From positions 248,001-312,000 of the IMG/VR virus record IMGVR_UViG_3300044644_001125: a stretch of 64,000 nt of DNA. One strand, given 5' to 3'. Below, piece by piece: positions 4,776 to 63,345 of this stretch (within the stretch, counting starts at the first letter, position 1; every line of letters begins with the position of its first letter). The position numbers and the translations under genes were made by a program. Below the pieces are notes generated by a model. That model did not search any database, was not told the DNA's origin, and saw nothing but the letters and a program-made list of their open reading frames with translations.

Positions 4776-4880
4776 ATGAGAATTCACGAAATACTAGAAA
4801 ACACAACCAAACAATTTCCAATTCCATGGAACTCGGCATGGAAGCCGAGTGACCCCCTAGGACGGGTTGCGACGCGCTAG
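4776..4880 (+). pseudogene. 5' fragment of a fourth leader-bearing ART-like gene
   Basis: GGAG RBS and ATG 4776 give MRIHEILENTTKQFPI..., stop at 4878-4880; FHGT (ttc cat gga act, 4822-4833) lies in a shifted frame. Confidence 0.55.
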
Positions 4881-6340
4881 CGGAGCAGAGGACGCGAGGG
4901 TCATTTAATTGACATGAGCGGCAACCGTCTTACCTGTTATTATACAGACATAGCTTACAAAGACAACTTCAATTTAACTAAATAGAGATATGAGCACATC
5001 TACTAAAATCACTGGATACAAAACGAAATGCCTGTTAAATCAGGAGCAGATCGCTTTGTTCGATAAATCAGTGGATGGTTGTGTATTTGCATATAACGAA
5101 TTTCTTGCATTGGTGAACGCCGAATATGCCATAACTGGTAAGATTTCTACCAAATGCTGTAGTGTCAAAGAATTAAGAAATAACAACCCGTGGTTAAAAG
5201 AGCTATCTAGTAGAGTAATCGATGGATCTCGTCTTAATCTATTGGATGCATTTAGCCGGTTCTTTAGTAAGCAAAATGACTTCCCAGTATTTAAAAACCG
5301 GTATAGTAAGAAATCACTAAGACATGCCGGCGATTGTTACTTGTACATGAAAAATGGGTATATGTACGCAGTTATTCCAAAAATTGGTCATGTGAAGCTA
5401 TTGACTGATTTCTCGGATTCAGCTAATCAATTTGATTATACAACTGTTACTGGGATAACCTTATCCCAAGATAGTCTTGGAAACTTTTATGTCTCATTTC
5501 ATGCGAAATCGACTACTGCTCATTTACCAAAGACCCATAAATCAGTTGGTATAGACCCAGGTCTTACTACTTTTGCGACCTTGAGCACTGGTAAAAAGAT
5601 CAAGAATCCAAGATTTCGTGAAAGAACAGAAAACCGAATGAAAGCGCTTCAGCGTAAACTCGCGAAATGTACCAAGAACTCAATAAGATATAACAAATAT
5701 AAGAAACAAATAGCTGCACTTCATCAGAAATCGGCAAATCAATTAAATGACTTCCATAAAAAGACATCAACTAAAATAACCAAAGGCTACGACAACATCT
5801 ATATTGAGGAAACTCAGACCAAAAACATGATGTCTCGTGGTAAGAAAAAAACAAAAAGCCCTAGACGCCTAGGGAAATCATTCGCTCAAGCCGGAATCAG
5901 TGCATTCCGTGAAATCTTGATAAGAAAGGCGGAGCTTGTTGGTAAAAAGGTTCATCTTGTACCAGCTCGCAATACAACAAAAACATGCAGTAGTTGTGGT
6001 CACATCCACAACGATTTAACTCTTAAAGATCGGTCATGGACTTGCCCCGTATGCGGTATTGAACATGACCGAGACATAAATGCTGCCCGTAATATATTAC
6101 AAAAAGGGCAAGCTAATCGGTTTACCGGAGGTGGACTTGTTGCACAGGGCAACAATACCGGGTTACCTAATCAAAAAAGGACGCAGCAAAGCGGGTTAAC
6201 TCCCGTTAGCAAAAGTACCAGTTCAGCTACTAGCAGTACCAGTAGCCTACCTGTTATTTAAACGTCTATTCACGGTTTATCCCGTGAACCGAGGACACGA
6301 CGTCCGAAGTTCTCAGGGATGCCGCGAAATACCGACGGTT
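4831..6340 (+). mobile_element. Non-autonomous tnpB-only element (IS200/IS605- or IS607-related); ends approximate
   Basis: GC-rich hairpins on both sides of tnpB (ACTCGGC/GCCGAGT 4831-4850; TTCACGG/CCGTGAA 6269-6288); lies between two fragments of an ART-like gene; no tnpA adjacent. Confidence 0.65.
4990..6261 (+). CDS. tnpB: RNA-guided endonuclease TnpB
   Basis: RuvC-I VGIDPG, RuvC-II IYIEE, zinc finger CSSC..CPVC, RuvC-III DRDINAARNI; N-terminal HTH-like region. Confidence 0.93.
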   Translation: MSTSTKITGYKTKCLLNQEQIALFDKSVDGCVFAYNEFLALVNAEYAITGKISTKCCSVKELRNNNPWLKELSSRVIDGSRLNLLDAFSRFFSKQNDFPVFKNRYSKKSLRHAGDCYLYMKNGYMYAVIPKIGHVKLLTDFSDSANQFDYTTVTGITLSQDSLGNFYVSFHAKSTTAHLPKTHKSVGIDPGLTTFATLSTGKKIKNPRFRERTENRMKALQRKLAKCTKNSIRYNKYKKQIAALHQKSANQLNDFHKKTSTKITKGYDNIYIEETQTKNMMSRGKKKTKSPRRLGKSFAQAGISAFREILIRKAELVGKKVHLVPARNTTKTCSSCGHIHNDLTLKDRSWTCPVCGIEHDRDINAARNILQKGQANRFTGGGLVAQGNNTGLPNQKRTQQSGLTPVSKSTSSATSSTSSLPVI

Positions 6341-6360
6341 TCTGCCACCTATGCTGGTGC
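6120..6360 (+). ncRNA. Putative TnpB omega-RNA (scaffold plus guide running into the flanking gene); boundaries uncertain
   Basis: Low-complexity C-terminal tail of tnpB followed by GC-rich hairpins (6269-6288; GGAC-acgac-GTCC); this is the expected position for TnpB guide RNAs. Confidence 0.45.
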
Positions 6361-6706
6361 CGAACCAAGCGCAACCGGTGAAATTACCCATTTCAAACAA
6401 TGTGGTAATGTGATGCCACTATTAATCAAACCCGGAAAATCAATGGTTGTCGATGCGAAAGGTGCTAACTGGAATGACATTTACATCAAAAAATATCCTA
6501 TCTTGGAAACAACCAACGATTTCGCGGAATATGCCCAATCAAATGGCAAGGATACTTTGTATATCAAAAACGTAAGAGATAATAAGACTTGGCAGAAAGA
6601 TAAACTTCCTAGCACGGTTGTATTTGCATTTCACCCATCTTATATAAGATCAATTAATGCAAAATTCGACCCAGCCAATCACGAAGATGAAGATTTAATG
6701 GCATGA
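6332..6706 (+). pseudogene. 3' fragment of the interrupted ART-like gene
   Basis: PTVSATYA..GNVMPLLIK..DTLYIKNVRD..VFAFHPSYIRSINAKFDP matches the C-terminal half of the ART-like family; no good RBS or start codon. Confidence 0.6.
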
Positions 6707-6769
6707 TATTATCAACTGTGTTATACTACATTCTCAGAATAACAGTCAATTACCACGAGGAGAAATAAG

Positions 6770-7033
6770 ATGAACACGATTGAATTGTTTTTAGCAGACT
6801 TGGAAAAGCTATGCGAGACGCACAATATCCAATTAATGTCCCCACCAAGTATAGCACCATTAGGAAACTCACAACGTAACTATTTGACATACCCGGGTGG
6901 TATAATGTCGGAGATGTTTGTACAACAGCAGCAAGTGGATATTACCATAAATCTACGAGCAATGCTAGAAGGTAATGTCCATCACGAGACAGACAACCGA
7001 CGTATTCACCCAGCTTTGAAGCATGACTATTAA
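6770..7033 (+). CDS. Hypothetical protein
   Basis: GAGGAG RBS; upstream extended -10 TGTTATACT at 6719. Confidence 0.65.
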   Translation: MNTIELFLADLEKLCETHNIQLMSPPSIAPLGNSQRNYLTYPGGIMSEMFVQQQQVDITINLRAMLEGNVHHETDNRRIHPALKHDY

Positions 7034-12933: not shown

Positions 12934-13257
12934 ATGCTGAAACGTGAGGATGTAAAACTTACCATTGAGATGGCACCAAAGCAATACGAAAAAGAATTAG
13001 CATGGGATACTGGTATGATGTACTGTTTTTCATTAGATATTAATGGAAAAACTGGTTGGAGATTACCTACTATATCAGATGTACGAGATTTATGGTTCCA
13101 ATATGATGCTTCCGAAATAGATGGAATCTACTGGACAAATCAAACCACACCAGGTGAAGATTTCGCATGGGCTGTTGATTCTGACGGTATAGATGCTACT
13201 GGATATGATAAGTGTATGGCTAAACTCATGGTTAGACCAGTACGAGATATCACTTGA
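12934..13257 (+). CDS. Short DUF1566/Lcl-like (CLec-fold) protein, paralog of the 60588-61473 genes
   Basis: EMAPK..YCFSLDINGKTGWRLPT..YWT..AW..VRPVRD. Confidence 0.75.
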   Translation: MLKREDVKLTIEMAPKQYEKELAWDTGMMYCFSLDINGKTGWRLPTISDVRDLWFQYDASEIDGIYWTNQTTPGEDFAWAVDSDGIDATGYDKCMAKLMVRPVRDIT

Positions 13258-32217: not shown

Positions 32218-35200
32218 TTAGCCTATCATCGCGGTGGTTTTTTGCGATATAAACTTAGCCATTGGTGTATTATTTTCCAATAACGTAATACCAGCACTTG
32301 CCGCCGTTGCAGTTTGTTCATACCAAACTTTACCAACCTTTCTATAAACAACGACGTTAACACTTGCATTAACCGGTATACTATCAAGTACCGAATCAGT
32401 CAGCCTGATGTAGTTGGAAGTACCATCGACCGAGAATTCAGCATCTAACAATTCATCAGCACGTGGGCTAGTAGAACCTAATGATTCATTGAATACATGC
32501 ATTGGATTTTTACGCAATCTTCTTCCGCCCACAAATACTTCAACCTGATCGCATGGACCATATCCAGTAGGTATATTACCAGCAGCCCAATTAGTTCTAA
32601 CAGATTTAACTGGAATATAACTCAATGGTCCAACCGATCTAGTAGAACCATCAATCATGAATGATTCTTTCATCTCAGTTTCGTTGTATGGGATTCGTTC
32701 TTGTATACTTACATCAGCAACATCAGTTCCTGCAGTATATAACTCTGCAATTGCAGTTCCCATACTACCACGTCTTAACTGTGATAATGTATTGTCAGTA
32801 AGCATCAAATACTCGATACGTTCGCCGTTAATCAATACAGTACCAGGTTGATTTCTTGCAGCAACAGGAATAGATAGCAGTGAGGCGTCAGTTACTAAAA
32901 TCTCAGTATCATAGTAGTTCAAATCTTTAGCCAATTGGATAGTTCCAATTGAATATCTGTTATATCTAAAGACATTTAGCATATCTTTTGATATTTCATA
33001 TGATTTGGTACTGCACAATTTCGATCCAAATAATACAACTTTAACCATATCAGATTCACTAGTGGTGTCTAGTAGATATACTTTTGTTTTATCATCGGAT
33101 AGATAATAATCACGGATTGGTGTTAATTTAACGCCGTTCACATAAACCCAAACATAACTTGAATCAATTGGCTTCATTGCTAATGCGTAACTAGCTTTTC
33201 CACCAACATGCTCATCTGTCAATAATTGCATAGTTTGGTATTGTGTAAACCAGACAACATTAACCACATCGTTCGTAGTCAGTTCACTACTGATAATCAA
33301 CGTATTTCCGTTAATGCTATACTCGGCATTTGAATTGTTTTCTATTAATACCACGTCATTAATAACCAATGAGTCAATAGTAACCAGTGTCATTTCTTCA
33401 TTGAAAACGTAATCGACCAAGAATGATTTTAAAACACCATTGACATATACTTTAATATTACTAGGTGTTGCATAACCACTTCCTAGTTCAATTTTGAATT
33501 GTGCAGTTGAGCCAGTATAAACACCGTAGGTTGTATCAACACCAGTCAACGCGCTACCATTAACATTCACAATCATTGGCGTATATTGATGGTTGGTTGG
33601 TTCTACTGCAAACATTGACAAGGTGAATTCTGGGTTATCGGTATAAATGAAGGTTTGTTCATTAATTCTTGCGATTGACGTATCAAAATCAACATTTGCA
33701 TTTGCACCAAAGCACACAACCTTAACATCGTCAGACACGGTAGGCATTGGGTTTACTGTAACTTCCGTTTTACCAGTTATTTTCTTGCCTGTTGTACTAC
33801 CAAAACTTGCGTCAGTGCTAATACCATTAACAGTTACATAAACTGATGTGGTATCTTTAAACTTAGCATTTGTTGCAAATTTGGCTGATTTACCATCAGC
33901 AACGAACGATTTTGAATCGAGAATTGCAACACCACCAACCCCAATCGCCGTGATTTCAATGATAGCACCAGCCGTAACCGGTAATACAAACTTAACTGTA
34001 TTGTTAGTTAGATTAATGGTATAGTGCGTGTCAATTGACTTCTTAACCTTATTCACCGTCACAATAACCGATGAGAATTCGATGATAGGTAAACCAATAC
34101 TATAGGTTGTTGTAATACCATCACTGATAAACACTGTTGAATGCAGTGGGGTTGAACCAGTTGATTTAGTATCAAATACTTTAATACTTAAACTATCAAG
34201 TACTTGACCTGGTACGTTTTCTTCAGTTGCTGATACATTCTCTGGACTTATAAATTTACCACCTTCAATTATAATTTCCTCAGCCTTCAAACCAGTTGCA
34301 GTTGTATACGCGTTGTTCAATCTCTCCAACGAACCACCACTCATATTGGTATCCACGATATTTGGGTCATTAATAACCAATGAACCATCGCTTTCTTCAG
34401 GTCTAAAGATTAACGTATCGCCTTGTATCGTGTCAAAATATGAACCAATATCAATAGTTGCCGACACGCCATCACCGATAAATGTTGGCATTTGTGCATA
34501 TGGATTGATTGTACTAGTTGAATCCCATTGCGATGTATATGCAATATCATCCAATCTAATAACTGATGGCATTGACCCATCATACAAGGTGTATGCCGTT
34601 GATTTCAATCCATACTGTTTAACAGATTTCCATGATTCACGTTTAACATAGATATTAATGTGTTGACCAGCTACTGGAACAAATGGCAAAGTGACGGTTG
34701 TTGCTATTACTGGATTCGCAATACCATCACAAACATAATAGTAATCACTACTTTGTTCAACACTATCCCAATTATCAGTGAACCAAGGTTGTGAATCCCA
34801 ACCACCAGTCACATCAAATGTAGTTCCTTGAACTTGAACTCCACCAAAATCCACACCTGTTATTAACTGAGATAATTGATTACCTTTCATACCTGACATT
34901 GGTTGGTAGTATTTCGATATACGGTTAACACTATCAAGTAAACTATCGTGTTTTTCGTAATTTACAACAATAACATCACCAACTATTGGATTGTTATTGA
35001 ATATAATCATACCAGAAGTAGCTATATTAGCATTACCAGCCGGTATTACCAATTCAACCGTATATTCGCTACTAAGAATCAATTTATCATTGATATAAAC
35101 AGTGATTCTATTTTTTTCATTTAGTGGAGCATACATCAAATTGAAAACTGATGTATAACCAGTCGCAATAAATGTTTCAGTATTATACAGCGATTGATAT

Positions 35201-58286: not shown

Positions 58287-58295
58287 GTGGTGATA

Positions 58296-58658
58296 ATGAA
58301 TATGCAAGAAACCTATTTGTTTGAACAGTTCCGTTCTGTATTCCCAGAGATTGAAAAGCAATTCTATATACCTTATGTTCGTAGTGGTTCTAAACGACAT
58401 TATCGCTATGACTTTCGGTATCAAAACAAGATAATTGAATTTCATGGTGATTTCTGGCATGCGCATCCTTTGCTGTATGCCGAAGACTTCGTTAATCCAA
58501 CTACGAAGAAAACTGCGTTTGAAACTTGGACTTCTGATTATCACAAGAATCAATACGCCATTGACAATGGTTATTCTTTACTGGTTGTTTGGGAATCTGA
58601 TTTTAACGCCAACCGACAAGAAGTTGTTGACCGTTGTACTAATTTCCTGTTAACATAA
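58296..58658 (+). CDS. Stand-alone Vsr/DUF559-like PD-(D/E)XK endonuclease domain
   Basis: YDF..KIIEFHGDFWH..D..K...A...GYSLLVVWESD. Confidence 0.75.
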   Translation: MNMQETYLFEQFRSVFPEIEKQFYIPYVRSGSKRHYRYDFRYQNKIIEFHGDFWHAHPLLYAEDFVNPTTKKTAFETWTSDYHKNQYAIDNGYSLLVVWESDFNANRQEVVDRCTNFLLT

Positions 58659-60474: not shown

Positions 60475-60499
60475 AAGCCCAGTTAATTCTGGGCTTTTT
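60475..60499 (+). terminator. Intrinsic terminator
   Basis: AAGCCCAG-ttaatt-CTGGGCTT-TTT. Confidence 0.8.
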
Positions 60500-60526: not shown

Positions 60527-60554
60527 TTGACATTCCAAAATAAGCCTGTATACT
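60527..60554 (+). promoter_or_regulatory. Sigma70-type promoter for the DUF1566-like triplet
   Basis: TTGACA-16-TATACT. Confidence 0.7.
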
Positions 60555-60587
60555 ACGCACAACTTAAACAAAATTAGAGAAACTATC

Positions 60588-60884
60588 ATGAAATTCGAAA
60601 TAGCACCTAAATCAACTGAGATAGAATCCAACTGGTTTGATGCAAAACTCTATTGCTTCTCCCTTAACATAGATGGTAAGACTGGTTGGAGATTACCAAC
60701 AAGGGCAGAACTAAATGAAATTTATGAATCTGATAATGATTTCGTTATTTGCACCTACTACTGGACATCTGCTGAATTTAGCGGCACCGGTGCTTGGACT
60801 CAACTATTCATTAATGGGATCCAGAACTTCCGCACGAAGGATTACGACAAAAATCAGGTTAGAGCAGTAAGGGACTTAGCATGA
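60588..60884 (+). CDS. Short DUF1566/Lcl-like (CLec-fold) protein 1
   Basis: W.DA..YC..L...GWRLPT..EL..YWTS..AW...F..G.Q....K....VRAVR. Confidence 0.8.
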   Translation: MKFEIAPKSTEIESNWFDAKLYCFSLNIDGKTGWRLPTRAELNEIYESDNDFVICTYYWTSAEFSGTGAWTQLFINGIQNFRTKDYDKNQVRAVRDLA

Positions 60885-61177
60885 AATTTGAAATAGCACC
60901 GAAAGAAACAGAGACCCAAGCCAATTGGGATGATGCCCGTTTGTATTGCTTTGCTCTTAATATAGATGAGAAAGTTGGCTGGAGATTACCTACTATTAAA
61001 GAGTTAAACTATATAAATCGTGTGATTAATGATCTTTCAACCGAAGATTACTGGTCATCAATAGAACGACCAGACAAAAGATACGCAGAATGCTATACCA
61101 CAATCGATGGTGGTTATACGGTCAATACATTAAAACACGATTTAGGCTATGTTAGCGCAGTAAGGGACTTAGTATGA
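60881..61177 (+). CDS. Short DUF1566/Lcl-like protein 2
   Basis: MKFEIAPK..GWRLPTIKEL..YWSS..VSAVRDL; ATGA overlap. Confidence 0.8.
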   Translation: MKFEIAPKETETQANWDDARLYCFALNIDEKVGWRLPTIKELNYINRVINDLSTEDYWSSIERPDKRYAECYTTIDGGYTVNTLKHDLGYVSAVRDLV

Positions 61178-61473
61178 ACTTTGAAATAGCACCCAAAGAA
61201 TACGAGATACGAGGAAACTGGGATGATTCCAGATTCTATTGCTTTGCTCTTAATATAGATGGAAAATCAGATTGGAGATTACCAACTAAAGAAGAACTTA
61301 ACGAAATCTTCCAATCAGCACATGATTTCGAGGATGGCTCGTATTGGTCTTCTACTCCTTCCGATGTTGATGAGGTAGGCGTGCGGGTTCAAATATTCGA
61401 TACTAGTGGATTCGAATACTCCGCAATAAAGTCCAGTCCCTACGGATATACCAGAGCCGTCAGAACAATCTAA
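61174..61473 (+). CDS. Short DUF1566/Lcl-like protein 3
   Basis: MNFEIAPK..DWRLPTKEEL..YWSST..TRAVR; ATGA overlap. Confidence 0.8.
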   Translation: MNFEIAPKEYEIRGNWDDSRFYCFALNIDGKSDWRLPTKEELNEIFQSAHDFEDGSYWSSTPSDVDEVGVRVQIFDTSGFEYSAIKSSPYGYTRAVRTI

Positions 61474-62849: not shown

Positions 62850-63345
62850 TGCTCACCGAATTACTAGATAGAACATAGAAAGGTGAGAGAATTGCTAAGA
62901 AAGCCGCGCACAGGCGACCATTACGTGCCCTTAAACCCTGGTCTACTTGAATCACAGGGGATGGAAGTTCCGACATTAGCAACGGAGATATAGTTCACTA
63001 CCCCACCAGATGAGTTATGGGATATGCCTTCATACAACCCATTTGAACTATAGCAAAAACGAATAACCAAGGCTAAAGATGGGTTGAGAAAACCCACGTT
63101 TACTAGATAAGGTAGCTGTTGTCTAGTAAGCCACCGTCAGATTAATAAGACTGAGCTCGAGGTACCGGCTGACCGCCTCTGTAATGCTCTACATGCTACT
63201 GTGATGCGATGCTTGTACGCAGAACCCTTGGACGTTTCAGTTCCACAATTAGAAATGTCCATTGTCCTTTGAATTAACCCGAGTTTTTCGGGTTAAGATG
63301 TTCAGCTCCACAACCCGCAGTGAGGGCTCCGCTGGCGCGTCGCTT
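62850..63345 (+). ncRNA. Putative large structured non-coding RNA; family not identified
   Basis: GC-richer ORF-free tract with many helices: 62852/62882, 62989/63044, 63080/63091, 63100/63120, 63153-63189 nested, 63230/63252, 63274/63288; upstream promoter. Confidence 0.7.

What the first reader, a model, noticed from the sequence alone, without database searches (positions are those of the whole stretch)
60588..61473. Tandem CLec-fold (DUF1566-like) paralogs whose C-termini look like DGR variable regions
Seen: three coupled ~98-aa paralogs (a fourth is at 12934) have conserved N-halves and divergent C-halves. Paralog 1 ends YWTS.EFSGTGAWTQLFINGIQNFRTKDYDKNQVRAVR, with many C-ending codons at variable positions (agc ggc acc, atc, aac ttc cgc, tac gac) despite the AT-rich genome. 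Paralogs 1 and 2 share GTTAG(A/C)GCAGTAAGGGACTTAG at their 3' ends. Established: DGRs mutate adenines in AAC-rich templates and commonly target CLec-fold C-termini. Inference: these are present or former targets of a DGR. No reverse transcriptase or template repeat is visible in this window. A sigma70-type promoter suggests an intracellular, non-tail role.
Basis: partly seen in the sequence, partly recalled or inferred. Interest (0 to 1): 0.6.

Follow-up and report, generated by a model that had tools for sequence, protein, structure and literature searches.

The report
Frozen DGR-made binder genes, jumbo phage
The three small genes belong to an 83-copy family of tiny lectin-fold binding proteins in a freshwater jumbo phage; their variable tails carry the codon-by-codon imprint of a diversity-generating retroelement (DGR) that the phage no longer has, so they look like a hard-wired library of binders made by hypermutation and then frozen.

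Summary
The three ORFs and the one at 12934 are Lcl_C/DUF1566 C-type-lectin-fold proteins. The phage genome (327 kb, closes on itself) holds 83 copies: 46 full-length and 37 with the N-half only. The C-terminal ~30 codons match, codon for codon including third bases, the template repeat (TR) of genuine DUF1566-type DGRs found in other phages and metagenomes. Variation among paralogs sits at the TR's adenine positions (p=1e-7). Hypervariable codons stay NNC/NNT. Residues that NNY cannot encode (K, E, Q, M, W) make up 1.7% there, against 47.5% in variable N-half columns.

No reverse transcriptase, Avd or TR exists in this genome, in two complete relatives, or in 42 partial relatives. The same search found the RT in every TR-bearing control. 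Orthologous variable regions are conserved between strains (pN/pS 0.28). In contigs from other lakes and years, the parts of this locus's variable regions that were covered are identical.

Verdict: these are former DGR targets, not present ones. They form a fossil DGR repertoire, multiplied in tandem arrays and apparently transcribed from sigma-70-like early promoters. My inference is that they are intracellular binders of host factors. This is a new variant of a known kind.

The parts
60475..60496 (+). Terminator-like hairpin followed by a T-run, after the gp46/SbcC-like gene. It separates that gene from the array.
   Evidence: sequence
60527..60554 (+). Sigma-70-like promoter site (TTGACA, 16 nt, TATACT), 34 nt upstream of paralog 1. 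This is a consensus match only.
   Evidence: Sites with an exact TTGACA -35 hexamer lie within 120 nt upstream of 9 family genes, most of them first genes of arrays or single copies.
60588..60884 (+). Paralog 1 (98 aa), a minimal Lcl_C/DUF1566 C-type-lectin-fold protein and the best-preserved member of this array.
   Evidence: Pfam 44.2 bits against a cut-off of 34.9. AF2 pLDDT 95.9. Foldseek match to 8q4e, E 4e-6.
60759..60872 (+). DGR-type variable-region homolog of paralog 1 (residues 58-95, from YWTS through AW.Q.F..G.Q....K to VRAVR). NNC/NNT codons sit at the template's AAY positions.
60881..61177 (+). Paralog 2 (98 aa). The variable-region framework (61049-61165) has largely decayed; YWSS and V.AVRDL are kept.
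   Evidence: (34.6 bits, just under the cut-off).
61174..61473 (+). Paralog 3 (99 aa). The variable-region framework (61342-61464) is partly kept (Q, F, G, K, RAVR).
   Evidence: (41.3 bits).
12934..13257 (+). Single-copy family member (107 aa) between the DNA polymerase fragment and the next gene, with its own promoter-like site upstream.
   Evidence: Its ortholog in a related strain is 98.1% identical.

Best explanation
The three genes are members of a family of 83 minimal C-type-lectin-fold (Lcl_C/DUF1566) proteins. The family is spread over 21 clusters and fills 5.9% of a circularly closed 327-kb freshwater jumbo phage.

Each full-length member has a conserved scaffold of about 55 residues. 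It also has a C-terminal binding region that is a DGR variable region by descent. An ancestor of this phage lineage had, or had access to, a DUF1566-type DGR. Its AAC/AAT-rich template rewrote the last ~30 codons of each tandem duplicate by adenine-specific mutagenic retrohoming.

The RT, Avd and template were then lost. Each variant was kept and now evolves under purifying selection. The result is a germline-encoded library of about 46 different binding sites, plus 37 scaffold-only derivatives.

Shown here: the fold, the copy number, the codon register with real templates, the adenine-site and NNY restriction, the absence of RT/Avd/TR, and the stability of orthologs.

Inferred: that retrohoming took place inside the phage lineage after duplication. 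Also inferred: that the proteins are made early in infection, stay in the cytoplasm, and each bind a different host (or competitor) molecule, for example as blockers of host defence or takeover factors.
For: Family and fold:
- Pfam and fold results.
- 83 distinct domain copies, 46 full-length and 37 N-half only.

Register with real templates:
- The framework pattern taken from this family found 59 IMG/VR loci. They include all-AAY templates with 2-4 variable regions that differ only at those A's.
- 18 of the 42 records searched have an RT, among them every locus where a TR was seen.
- A TR-type pattern found 111 metagenome matches.
- Two of these loci were checked and are target(Lcl_C)-bAvd-TR-RT cassettes.

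Variation follows the template's adenines:
- Aligned to one such TR (taken as a TR from its all-AAY pattern alone; its 1.1-kb contig was not checked for an RT), sites with A have mean entropy 1.09 bits and other sites 0.45 bits (Mann-Whitney p=1e-7).
- The family consensus equals the TR base at 53 of 69 non-A sites.
- AAY is the modal codon in 9 of 17 hypervariable columns.
- Third bases match the TR column by column: NNT, CAG, NNT, TTC, NNC, NNT, GGC, NNC, CAG, NNC x3, NNT, AAG.
- Base and residue spectra at hypervariable codons resemble those of genuine variable regions.
- K+E+Q+M+W make up 1.7% of 1274 residues at hypervariable columns in 99 family members, against 47.5% in variable N-half columns.
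- In the closest paralog pair the N-half is 92% identical. Hypervariable positions 1+2 are 24% identical, position 3 of those codons 71%, and the framework 86%.

No DGR machinery:
- this genome; relatives; no TR.
- The genome closes on itself.

Frozen now:
- Orthologs have VR pN/pS 0.28 and VR pN 0.016.
- Contigs from other samples are identical over the covered parts of this locus's variable regions.

Early promoter-like sites.
Against: - No RT, TR or Avd was found in any of 45 records of this phage clade, three of them complete or closed. The DGR is therefore inferred only from its footprint.
- dN at hypervariable codons is only 1.5-4.5 times dS of the N-half in the closest paralog pairs. 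Strong positive selection on a single captured DGR-derived gene is not excluded by rates alone.
- GC3 is also raised at NNR codons of the C-half, and non-A sites vary too.
- Paralogs 2 and 3 of the reported array have largely lost the framework.
- The function is inferred, with no expression or binding data. The promoters are consensus matches only.
- Read laying used assembled contigs, which hide rare variants.
Confidence: 0.7

Rival explanations
1. A single DGR target gene, or just its lectin-fold module, was captured once from a DGR-bearing donor. All later diversity among the phage paralogs arose by ordinary duplication, point mutation and positive selection on the same binding-site codons. 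No retrohoming took place in the phage lineage.
For: - No RT or TR in any relative.
- dN(hypervariable)/dS(N-half) is 1.5-4.5, high but not impossible for an arms-race surface.
- Non-A sites also vary.
- Array genes turn over between strains: 3 genes against 2, with 62-69% nt identity inside flanks of about 90%.
Against: - Point mutation would often make K, E, Q, M or W from NNY codons. These are 1.7% at hypervariable columns against 47.5% in variable N-half columns.
- NNR codons are only about 13-15% at hypervariable codons.
- AAY is the modal codon in 9 of 17 hypervariable columns. Real variable regions keep A at about 27% of first and 54% of second positions, so a single captured one should hold AAY at only about 15% of these codons.
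- Identity at hypervariable positions 1+2 is nearly flat (0.38 falling to 0.28) across all paralog distances.
Confidence: 0.17
2. The variable regions are still being diversified. The RT and template would be supplied in trans by the host's DGR, by a co-infecting element, or by a segment absent from all assemblies.
For: - Templates with the same framework are common in environmental metagenomes (111 matches).
- DGRs are known to act on remote targets within one genome (PMC7517822).
- Contig-level data cannot exclude rare variants.
Against: - Orthologous variable regions are conserved between strains and evolve under purifying selection.
- Contigs from other lakes and years are identical over the covered parts of this locus's variable regions.
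- The genome closes on itself, and a related strain's contig bridges its ends.
- No AT-rich cognate TR was found in IMG/VR.
Confidence: 0.07
3. The resemblance to DGR variable regions is convergent or compositional: a Tyr/Ser/Gly/Asn-rich binding loop in a lectin fold. The family would have no retroelement history.
For: - Binding surfaces are often rich in Y, S, G and N.
- A-richness at codon positions 1 and 2 is not far from the genome's coding average.
Against: - Synonymous choices (GGC, TAC, AGC, and NNT against NNC column by column) follow the foreign templates, not this genome's codon usage.
- Framework length and residues are identical from YWSS to VRAVR.
- The family's own framework pattern found genuine TR/VR sets.
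Confidence: 0.03

Closest known systems
DUF1566-type (CLec2, 'category d') DGR target proteins, e.g. Legionella LdtA and the short DUF1566-only targets (Wu et al. 2018, PMC5758913)
   Same: Same Pfam family and fold. The variable region sits at the extreme C-terminus. The framework is the same (YWSS.E..NNAW.Q.F..G.Q....K....VRAVR), with AAY-derived NNC/NNT codons in the same columns. About half of the known category-d targets are also domain-only proteins (PMC5758913).
   Different: There is no RT, Avd or TR in cis. There are 83 copies in one genome. The N-half scaffold is distinct from that of the environmental targets, whose best match to the family HMM is 52 bits. There is no lipoprotein or secretion signal at the N-terminus (MNFEIAPK...). 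The variable regions are not varying now.
Remote paralogs of DGR variable proteins with remnant TR-VR homology in cyanobacteria, e.g. Nostoc PCC 7120 all3226 (Vallota-Eastman et al. 2020, PMC7517822)
   Same: Lectin-fold modules are multiplied by duplication. Some copies keep TR-like footprints with no RT nearby. The authors likewise suggest that the diversification parts are removed once a variant is chosen.
   Different: Those genomes still hold DGRs elsewhere and have only a handful of such paralogs, often fused to kinase or caspase domains. Here the genome is a lytic-type jumbo phage with no DGR at all, tens of domain-only copies, and tandem arrays.
Lineage-specific expansions in jumbo phages, e.g. 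about 35 zinc-ribbon copies in Bacillus phage G (Iyer et al. 2021, PMC7824862)
   Same: A small domain is multiplied many times in one giant phage genome, presumably for conflict with the host.
   Different: The domain is different and there are 83 copies. That survey of 224 jumbo phages reported no FGS-type (DGR-diversified) C-type-lectin-fold domains. No isolate phage in a 50,697-record collection matches paralog 1 by tblastn.
Legionella pneumophila Lcl C-terminal domain (PDB 8q4e)
   Same: Best structural match: Foldseek E 4e-6, TM 0.75, 30% identity.
   Different: In Lcl the domain caps a collagen-like adhesin outside the cell. Here it stands alone and is probably cytoplasmic.

Membership tests
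Pfam PF07603 Lcl_C (DUF1566), C-type-lectin-like fold | Profile match at or above the curated gathering score | tested here: met
   Paralog 1 scores 44.2 bits and paralog 3 41.3 bits, against a cut-off of 34.9. Paralog 2 (34.6) and the 12934 gene (34.5) fall just under it. 27 of the genome's copies are over the cut-off.
Pfam PF07603 Lcl_C (DUF1566), C-type-lectin-like fold | C-type-lectin-like three-dimensional fold | tested here: met
   AF2 pLDDT 95.9 and pTM 0.86. The top PDB match is 8q4e, followed by snake-venom and NK-receptor C-type lectin-like domains and FGE.
Diversity-generating retroelement (complete, active system) | DGR-type reverse transcriptase encoded in the element or genome | tested here: not met
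   RVT_1 gave 0 candidates at E<=1 in the closed 327-kb genome and 0 in 44 relatives' records. The same search found RTs in 18 control records.
Diversity-generating retroelement (complete, active system) | Template repeat that differs from the variable region only at adenines | tested here: not met
   The self-BLAST scan, an nhmmer search with the C-half model and an AAC-window scan found no TR in the genome. An AT-rich cognate TR pattern found nothing in IMG/VR.
Diversity-generating retroelement (complete, active system) | Accessory variability determinant (Avd) | tested here: not met
   TIGR02436 and PF22296 bAvd gave no match at E<=1. bAvd was found in the control cassettes.
Diversity-generating retroelement (complete, active system) | Ongoing hypervariation of the variable region within populations | tested here: not met
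   In orthologs the variable region diverges less than the N-half, with pN/pS 0.28. Contigs from other lakes and years are identical over the covered parts (contigs only, so rare variants were not testable).
DGR variable protein (target) by descent | Variable region at the C-terminus of a lectin fold, in register with a known TR class, with variation confined to the template's adenine sites and NNY codons | tested here: met
   p=1e-7; 53 of 69 non-A sites agree; K/E/Q/M/W 1.7% against 47.5%.
DGR variable protein (target) by descent | IMH-like element and downstream hairpin needed for retrohoming | not tested
   Only the conserved V-R-A-V-R-D 3' end was noted. No functional motif model was available.

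The most novel reading that the evidence does not exclude
The phage's variable regions are written by a DGR that is not its own. The host's or a co-infecting element's RT and template, which share this very common framework, would retrohome into phage DNA during infection. The phage would thus harvest variants across genomes and then fix them as new array members.
Probability: 0.07. Interest if true: 0.92.

Novelty: new variant of a known kind. Interest (0 to 1): 0.72.

Why it matters
DGRs are known as live hypermutation machines acting on one or a few genes. Here the same chemistry seems to have been used to stock a phage genome with dozens of different ready-made binding modules, after which the machine was discarded. 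That is a shift from on-demand diversification to a germline repertoire.

The family is one of the largest gene families seen in a phage. It occurs in a widespread clade of freshwater jumbo phages, and similar RT-less arrays occur in other large phage contigs (L131, L134).

It offers a natural set of small, well-folding lectin-fold binders (97 aa) whose targets could reveal what a jumbo phage needs to recognise inside its host. It also shows that DGR surveys keyed on the RT miss a whole class of DGR-shaped genes.

Tried and rejected
1. RT hidden in the 'missing 8%'. Rejected: the contig's first 176 bp repeat its last 176 bp at 98.9%, and a related strain's 53-kb contig bridges the ends. Neither holds an RT.
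2. TR in cis. The self-BLAST adenine-bias scan gave at best 8 of 10 mismatches in 59 bp, in an unrelated repeat family at G000 77-100 kb. The only AAC-rich window (G000 312416) is an out-of-frame artefact of a Gln-rich ORF. The nhmmer search found no copy outside family ORFs.
3. Cognate AT-rich TR in IMG/VR: 0 matches.
4. Homologs in isolate phages: tblastn of paralog 1 against 50,697 records found none.
5. They show identity over the covered parts of the variable regions and cassette turnover in a related strain. They cannot show rare variants.
6. I first took the conserved AAG (Lys) inside the variable region as evidence against a DGR. I dropped this because genuine TRs and variable regions of this class keep the same AAG.
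7. I first estimated dN/dS above 10 at hypervariable codons. A proper count gave 1.5-4.5, so the rate argument was downgraded and the NNY/KEQMW argument carries the weight.
8. Gene conversion of N-halves as the cause of the contrast. Rejected because positions 1-2 and position 3 of the same codons behave differently.

Full report
WHAT IS THERE

The window is G000:C1:248001-312000 of a 327,256-bp IMG/VR virus record with 38% GC. By its gp46/SbcC-like gene the phage is a distant relative of the PA5oct and Atu_ph07 jumbo phages, at 48.5% and 45.7% aa identity. It comes from lake water: DNA runs from 22 studies hold parts of the locus.

The three ORFs at 60588-60884, 60881-61177 and 61174-61473 overlap by ATGA. 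They follow a terminator-like hairpin and a TTGACA-16-TATACT site. They lie between a gp46-like gene and PDDEXK endonuclease and RNase H genes. All three, and the ORF at 12934-13257, match Pfam Lcl_C (formerly DUF1566). An AlphaFold model of paralog 1 is confident (pLDDT 95.9). Its best PDB match is the Legionella Lcl C-terminal domain, followed by C-type lectin-like and FGE folds.

SCALE

Pfam finds 62 matches in the genome. An HMM iterated on the genome's own ORFs finds 83 distinct domain copies in 21 clusters, covering 5.9% of the genome. Of these, 46 are full-length (about 97 aa, ending VRAVRD/S) and 37 keep only the N-half.

Arrays reach 17 genes with overlapping starts and stops. Strict sigma-70-like sites lie upstream of 9 family genes, most of them first genes of arrays or single copies.

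Relatives also carry the family. Two complete 372-kb genomes each have 38-40 first-look candidates, 12 and 16 of which match Lcl_C at E<=0.001. A protein search returned 349 metagenomic homologs, all about 97 aa among the best 120 listed. No isolate phage matches.

IS A DGR PRESENT?

No.
- RVT_1, bAvd and TIGR02436 find nothing in the genome.
- The record is called 92% complete and linear, but its first 176 bp repeat its last 176 bp at 98.9%. A related strain's 53-kb contig runs from its right end straight into its left end. The genome is therefore closed.
- No RT occurs in 44 relatives' records, two of them complete with terminal repeats.
- The same search found an RT in 18 of 42 control records, including every locus where I saw a template. 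The negative result is therefore meaningful.
- A self-BLAST scan for adenine-biased repeat pairs, an nhmmer search with the C-half model and an AAC-window scan found no template.

ARE THE VARIABLE REGIONS VARYING NOW?

No.
- Contigs from other samples are letter-for-letter identical over the stretches they cover. A 2016 run covers 60571-61189, another run 60553-61051, and a third 60701-60860 and 60875-61436. Together these span the variable regions of paralogs 1 and 2 and most of that of paralog 3.
- The substitution spectrum is not adenine-biased. These are contigs only, so rare variants would be missed.
- In 14 orthologous pairs between this genome and related strains (91-98% nt identity), the variable region is less diverged than the N-half. 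It is under purifying selection: pN/pS 0.28 against 0.20.
- What does change between strains is gene content. The closest relatives have two genes here, not three. These are only 62-69% identical to the window's genes, although the flanks are about 90% identical.

WERE THEY MADE BY A DGR?

The evidence says yes.

Codon pattern among close paralogs. Hypervariable codons change at positions 1 and 2 while position 3 stays C or T. AAC or AAT is often the commonest codon. Synonymous choices in the C-half go against the genome's usage: GGC is 0.54 of GGY against 0.15, and TAC is 0.62 of TAY against 0.37. Third-position A falls from 0.35 to 0.18.

Match to genuine DGR loci. A degenerate pattern built only from the family's invariant framework bases found 59 IMG/VR loci. 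Many are 35-45-kb phages or prophages with an all-AAY template next to an RT and 2-4 variable regions that differ from it only at those A's. A template-type pattern found 111 metagenome matches. Two loci that I checked are classical target(Lcl_C)-bAvd-TR-RT cassettes.

Same framework and third bases. These templates encode YWSS.E-NN-AWNQNFNNGNQNNNNKNN.NYVRAVRDF. This is the jumbo-phage family's framework in the same length and register, down to which columns are NNT and which NNC.

Variation at adenine sites. Against one such template (L262, judged a TR from its all-AAY pattern; its short contig was not checked for an RT), family sites where the template has A have mean entropy 1.09 bits, and other sites 0.45 bits (p=1e-7). 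The family consensus equals the template at 53 of 69 non-A sites.

Residue spectrum. Base and residue spectra at hypervariable codons resemble those of genuine variable regions. In 99 family members, residues that NNY codons cannot encode (K, E, Q, M, W) make up 1.7% at hypervariable columns. They make up 47.5% in variable N-half columns.

Closest paralogs. Even the closest pair (N-half 92% identical) is at random-level identity (24%) at hypervariable positions 1-2. Position 3 of the same codons is 71% identical and the framework 86%. Gene conversion cannot produce that pattern.

THE MAIN RIVAL

The main rival is capture of one DGR-derived gene followed by ordinary positive selection. Rates alone do not exclude it, since dN(hypervariable)/dS(N-half) is 1.5-4.5. 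It does not explain the near-absence of K/E/Q/M/W, the low share of NNR codons, or AAY being the modal codon in 9 of 17 columns. I give it 0.17. A DGR acting in trans gets 0.07. It is the most novel reading, because templates of this framework are common in the environment.

HOW IT LIKELY WORKS NOW

This section is inference. Each array is transcribed from sigma-70-like, that is early-type, promoters. The proteins have no signal sequence and are single 97-aa lectin-fold domains. The former variable region should form the exposed binding face, as in solved DGR variable proteins (established knowledge, not tested here). A set of about 46 distinct, conserved binding sites suggests 46 distinct targets in the host cell, such as defence or takeover factors. 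The 37 scaffold-only copies have no explanation yet.

COMPARISON AND NOVELTY

- Short DUF1566-only DGR targets are known (PMC5758913).
- Remnant TR-VR homology in paralogs without a nearby RT has been noted in Nostoc, with the idea that the diversifier is removed once a variant is chosen (PMC7517822).
- A survey of 224 jumbo phages found no DGR-type (FGS) lectin-fold domains. It called about 35 copies of a zinc ribbon in phage G unprecedented (PMC7824862).

An 83-copy, RT-less, DGR-imprinted family in a jumbo phage is therefore a new variant of a known kind. Similar RT-less arrays in other large phage contigs (L131, L134) suggest it is not unique.

LIMITS

- There is no expression or binding evidence.
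- The promoter calls are consensus matches.
- The variation test used contigs only.
- The DGR is inferred from its footprint alone.

Noticed in passing
window 62903-63053 (+); also G000 35014-35164 (-), 165335-165485 (+), 232703-232853 (+): There are four full-length copies of the Rfam Polynucleobacter-1 RNA (RF01718, 68-80 bits against a gathering score of 37). The window copy lies in an ORF-poor stretch that is a repeat of about 1 kb. All four lie 0.3-1.9 kb downstream of a family array and in the same orientation. This may hint at the host (Polynucleobacter, a freshwater genus) or be a phage-borne multi-copy RNA. The link to the arrays is unexplained.
   Followed up: partly
window 4826-6335 (G000 252826-254335) and G000 182430-183870: A 1.5-kb stretch is present twice in the genome. 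Both copies are about 92% identical to one place in a related strain's contig. Its content was not examined.
   Followed up: no
G000 77,500-100,300 (outside the window): A family of short (about 60-90 bp) dispersed repeats at 80-90% identity turned up in the self-BLAST scan. It is unrelated to the lectin-fold family.
   Followed up: no
whole record G000 (ends at 1-176 and 327081-327256): The record is labelled linear and 92% complete, but its ends overlap by 176 bp at 98.9%. A related strain's contig bridges them, so the genome is in effect closed at about 327 kb.
   Followed up: yes
G000 116.9-119.3 kb (-), 157.3-161.2 kb (+), 231.2-232.1 kb (+): 37 family members keep only the N-terminal scaffold (69-87 aa). 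Many belong to a 'YCFCLG-DGWRLPT' subtype and stand in arrays with 8-nt start/stop overlaps. They are conserved in the 372-kb relatives, so they are probably functional, but they cannot form the whole lectin fold.
   Followed up: partly
L131 (IMGVR_UViG_3300020185_004330, 87,981 bp) 4974-6778; L134 2896-4009: Another AT-rich large-phage lineage has tandem 107-aa Lcl_C genes with the same NNC/NNT variable-region framework and no RT in the record. This is an independent case of an RT-less array.
   Followed up: partly
window 58287-58658 (+): A 123-aa ORF with an 'HGDFWHAHP' motif lies just upstream of the gp46-like gene. It has no Pfam match and may be a small nuclease-like gene. This was not resolved.
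   Followed up: no
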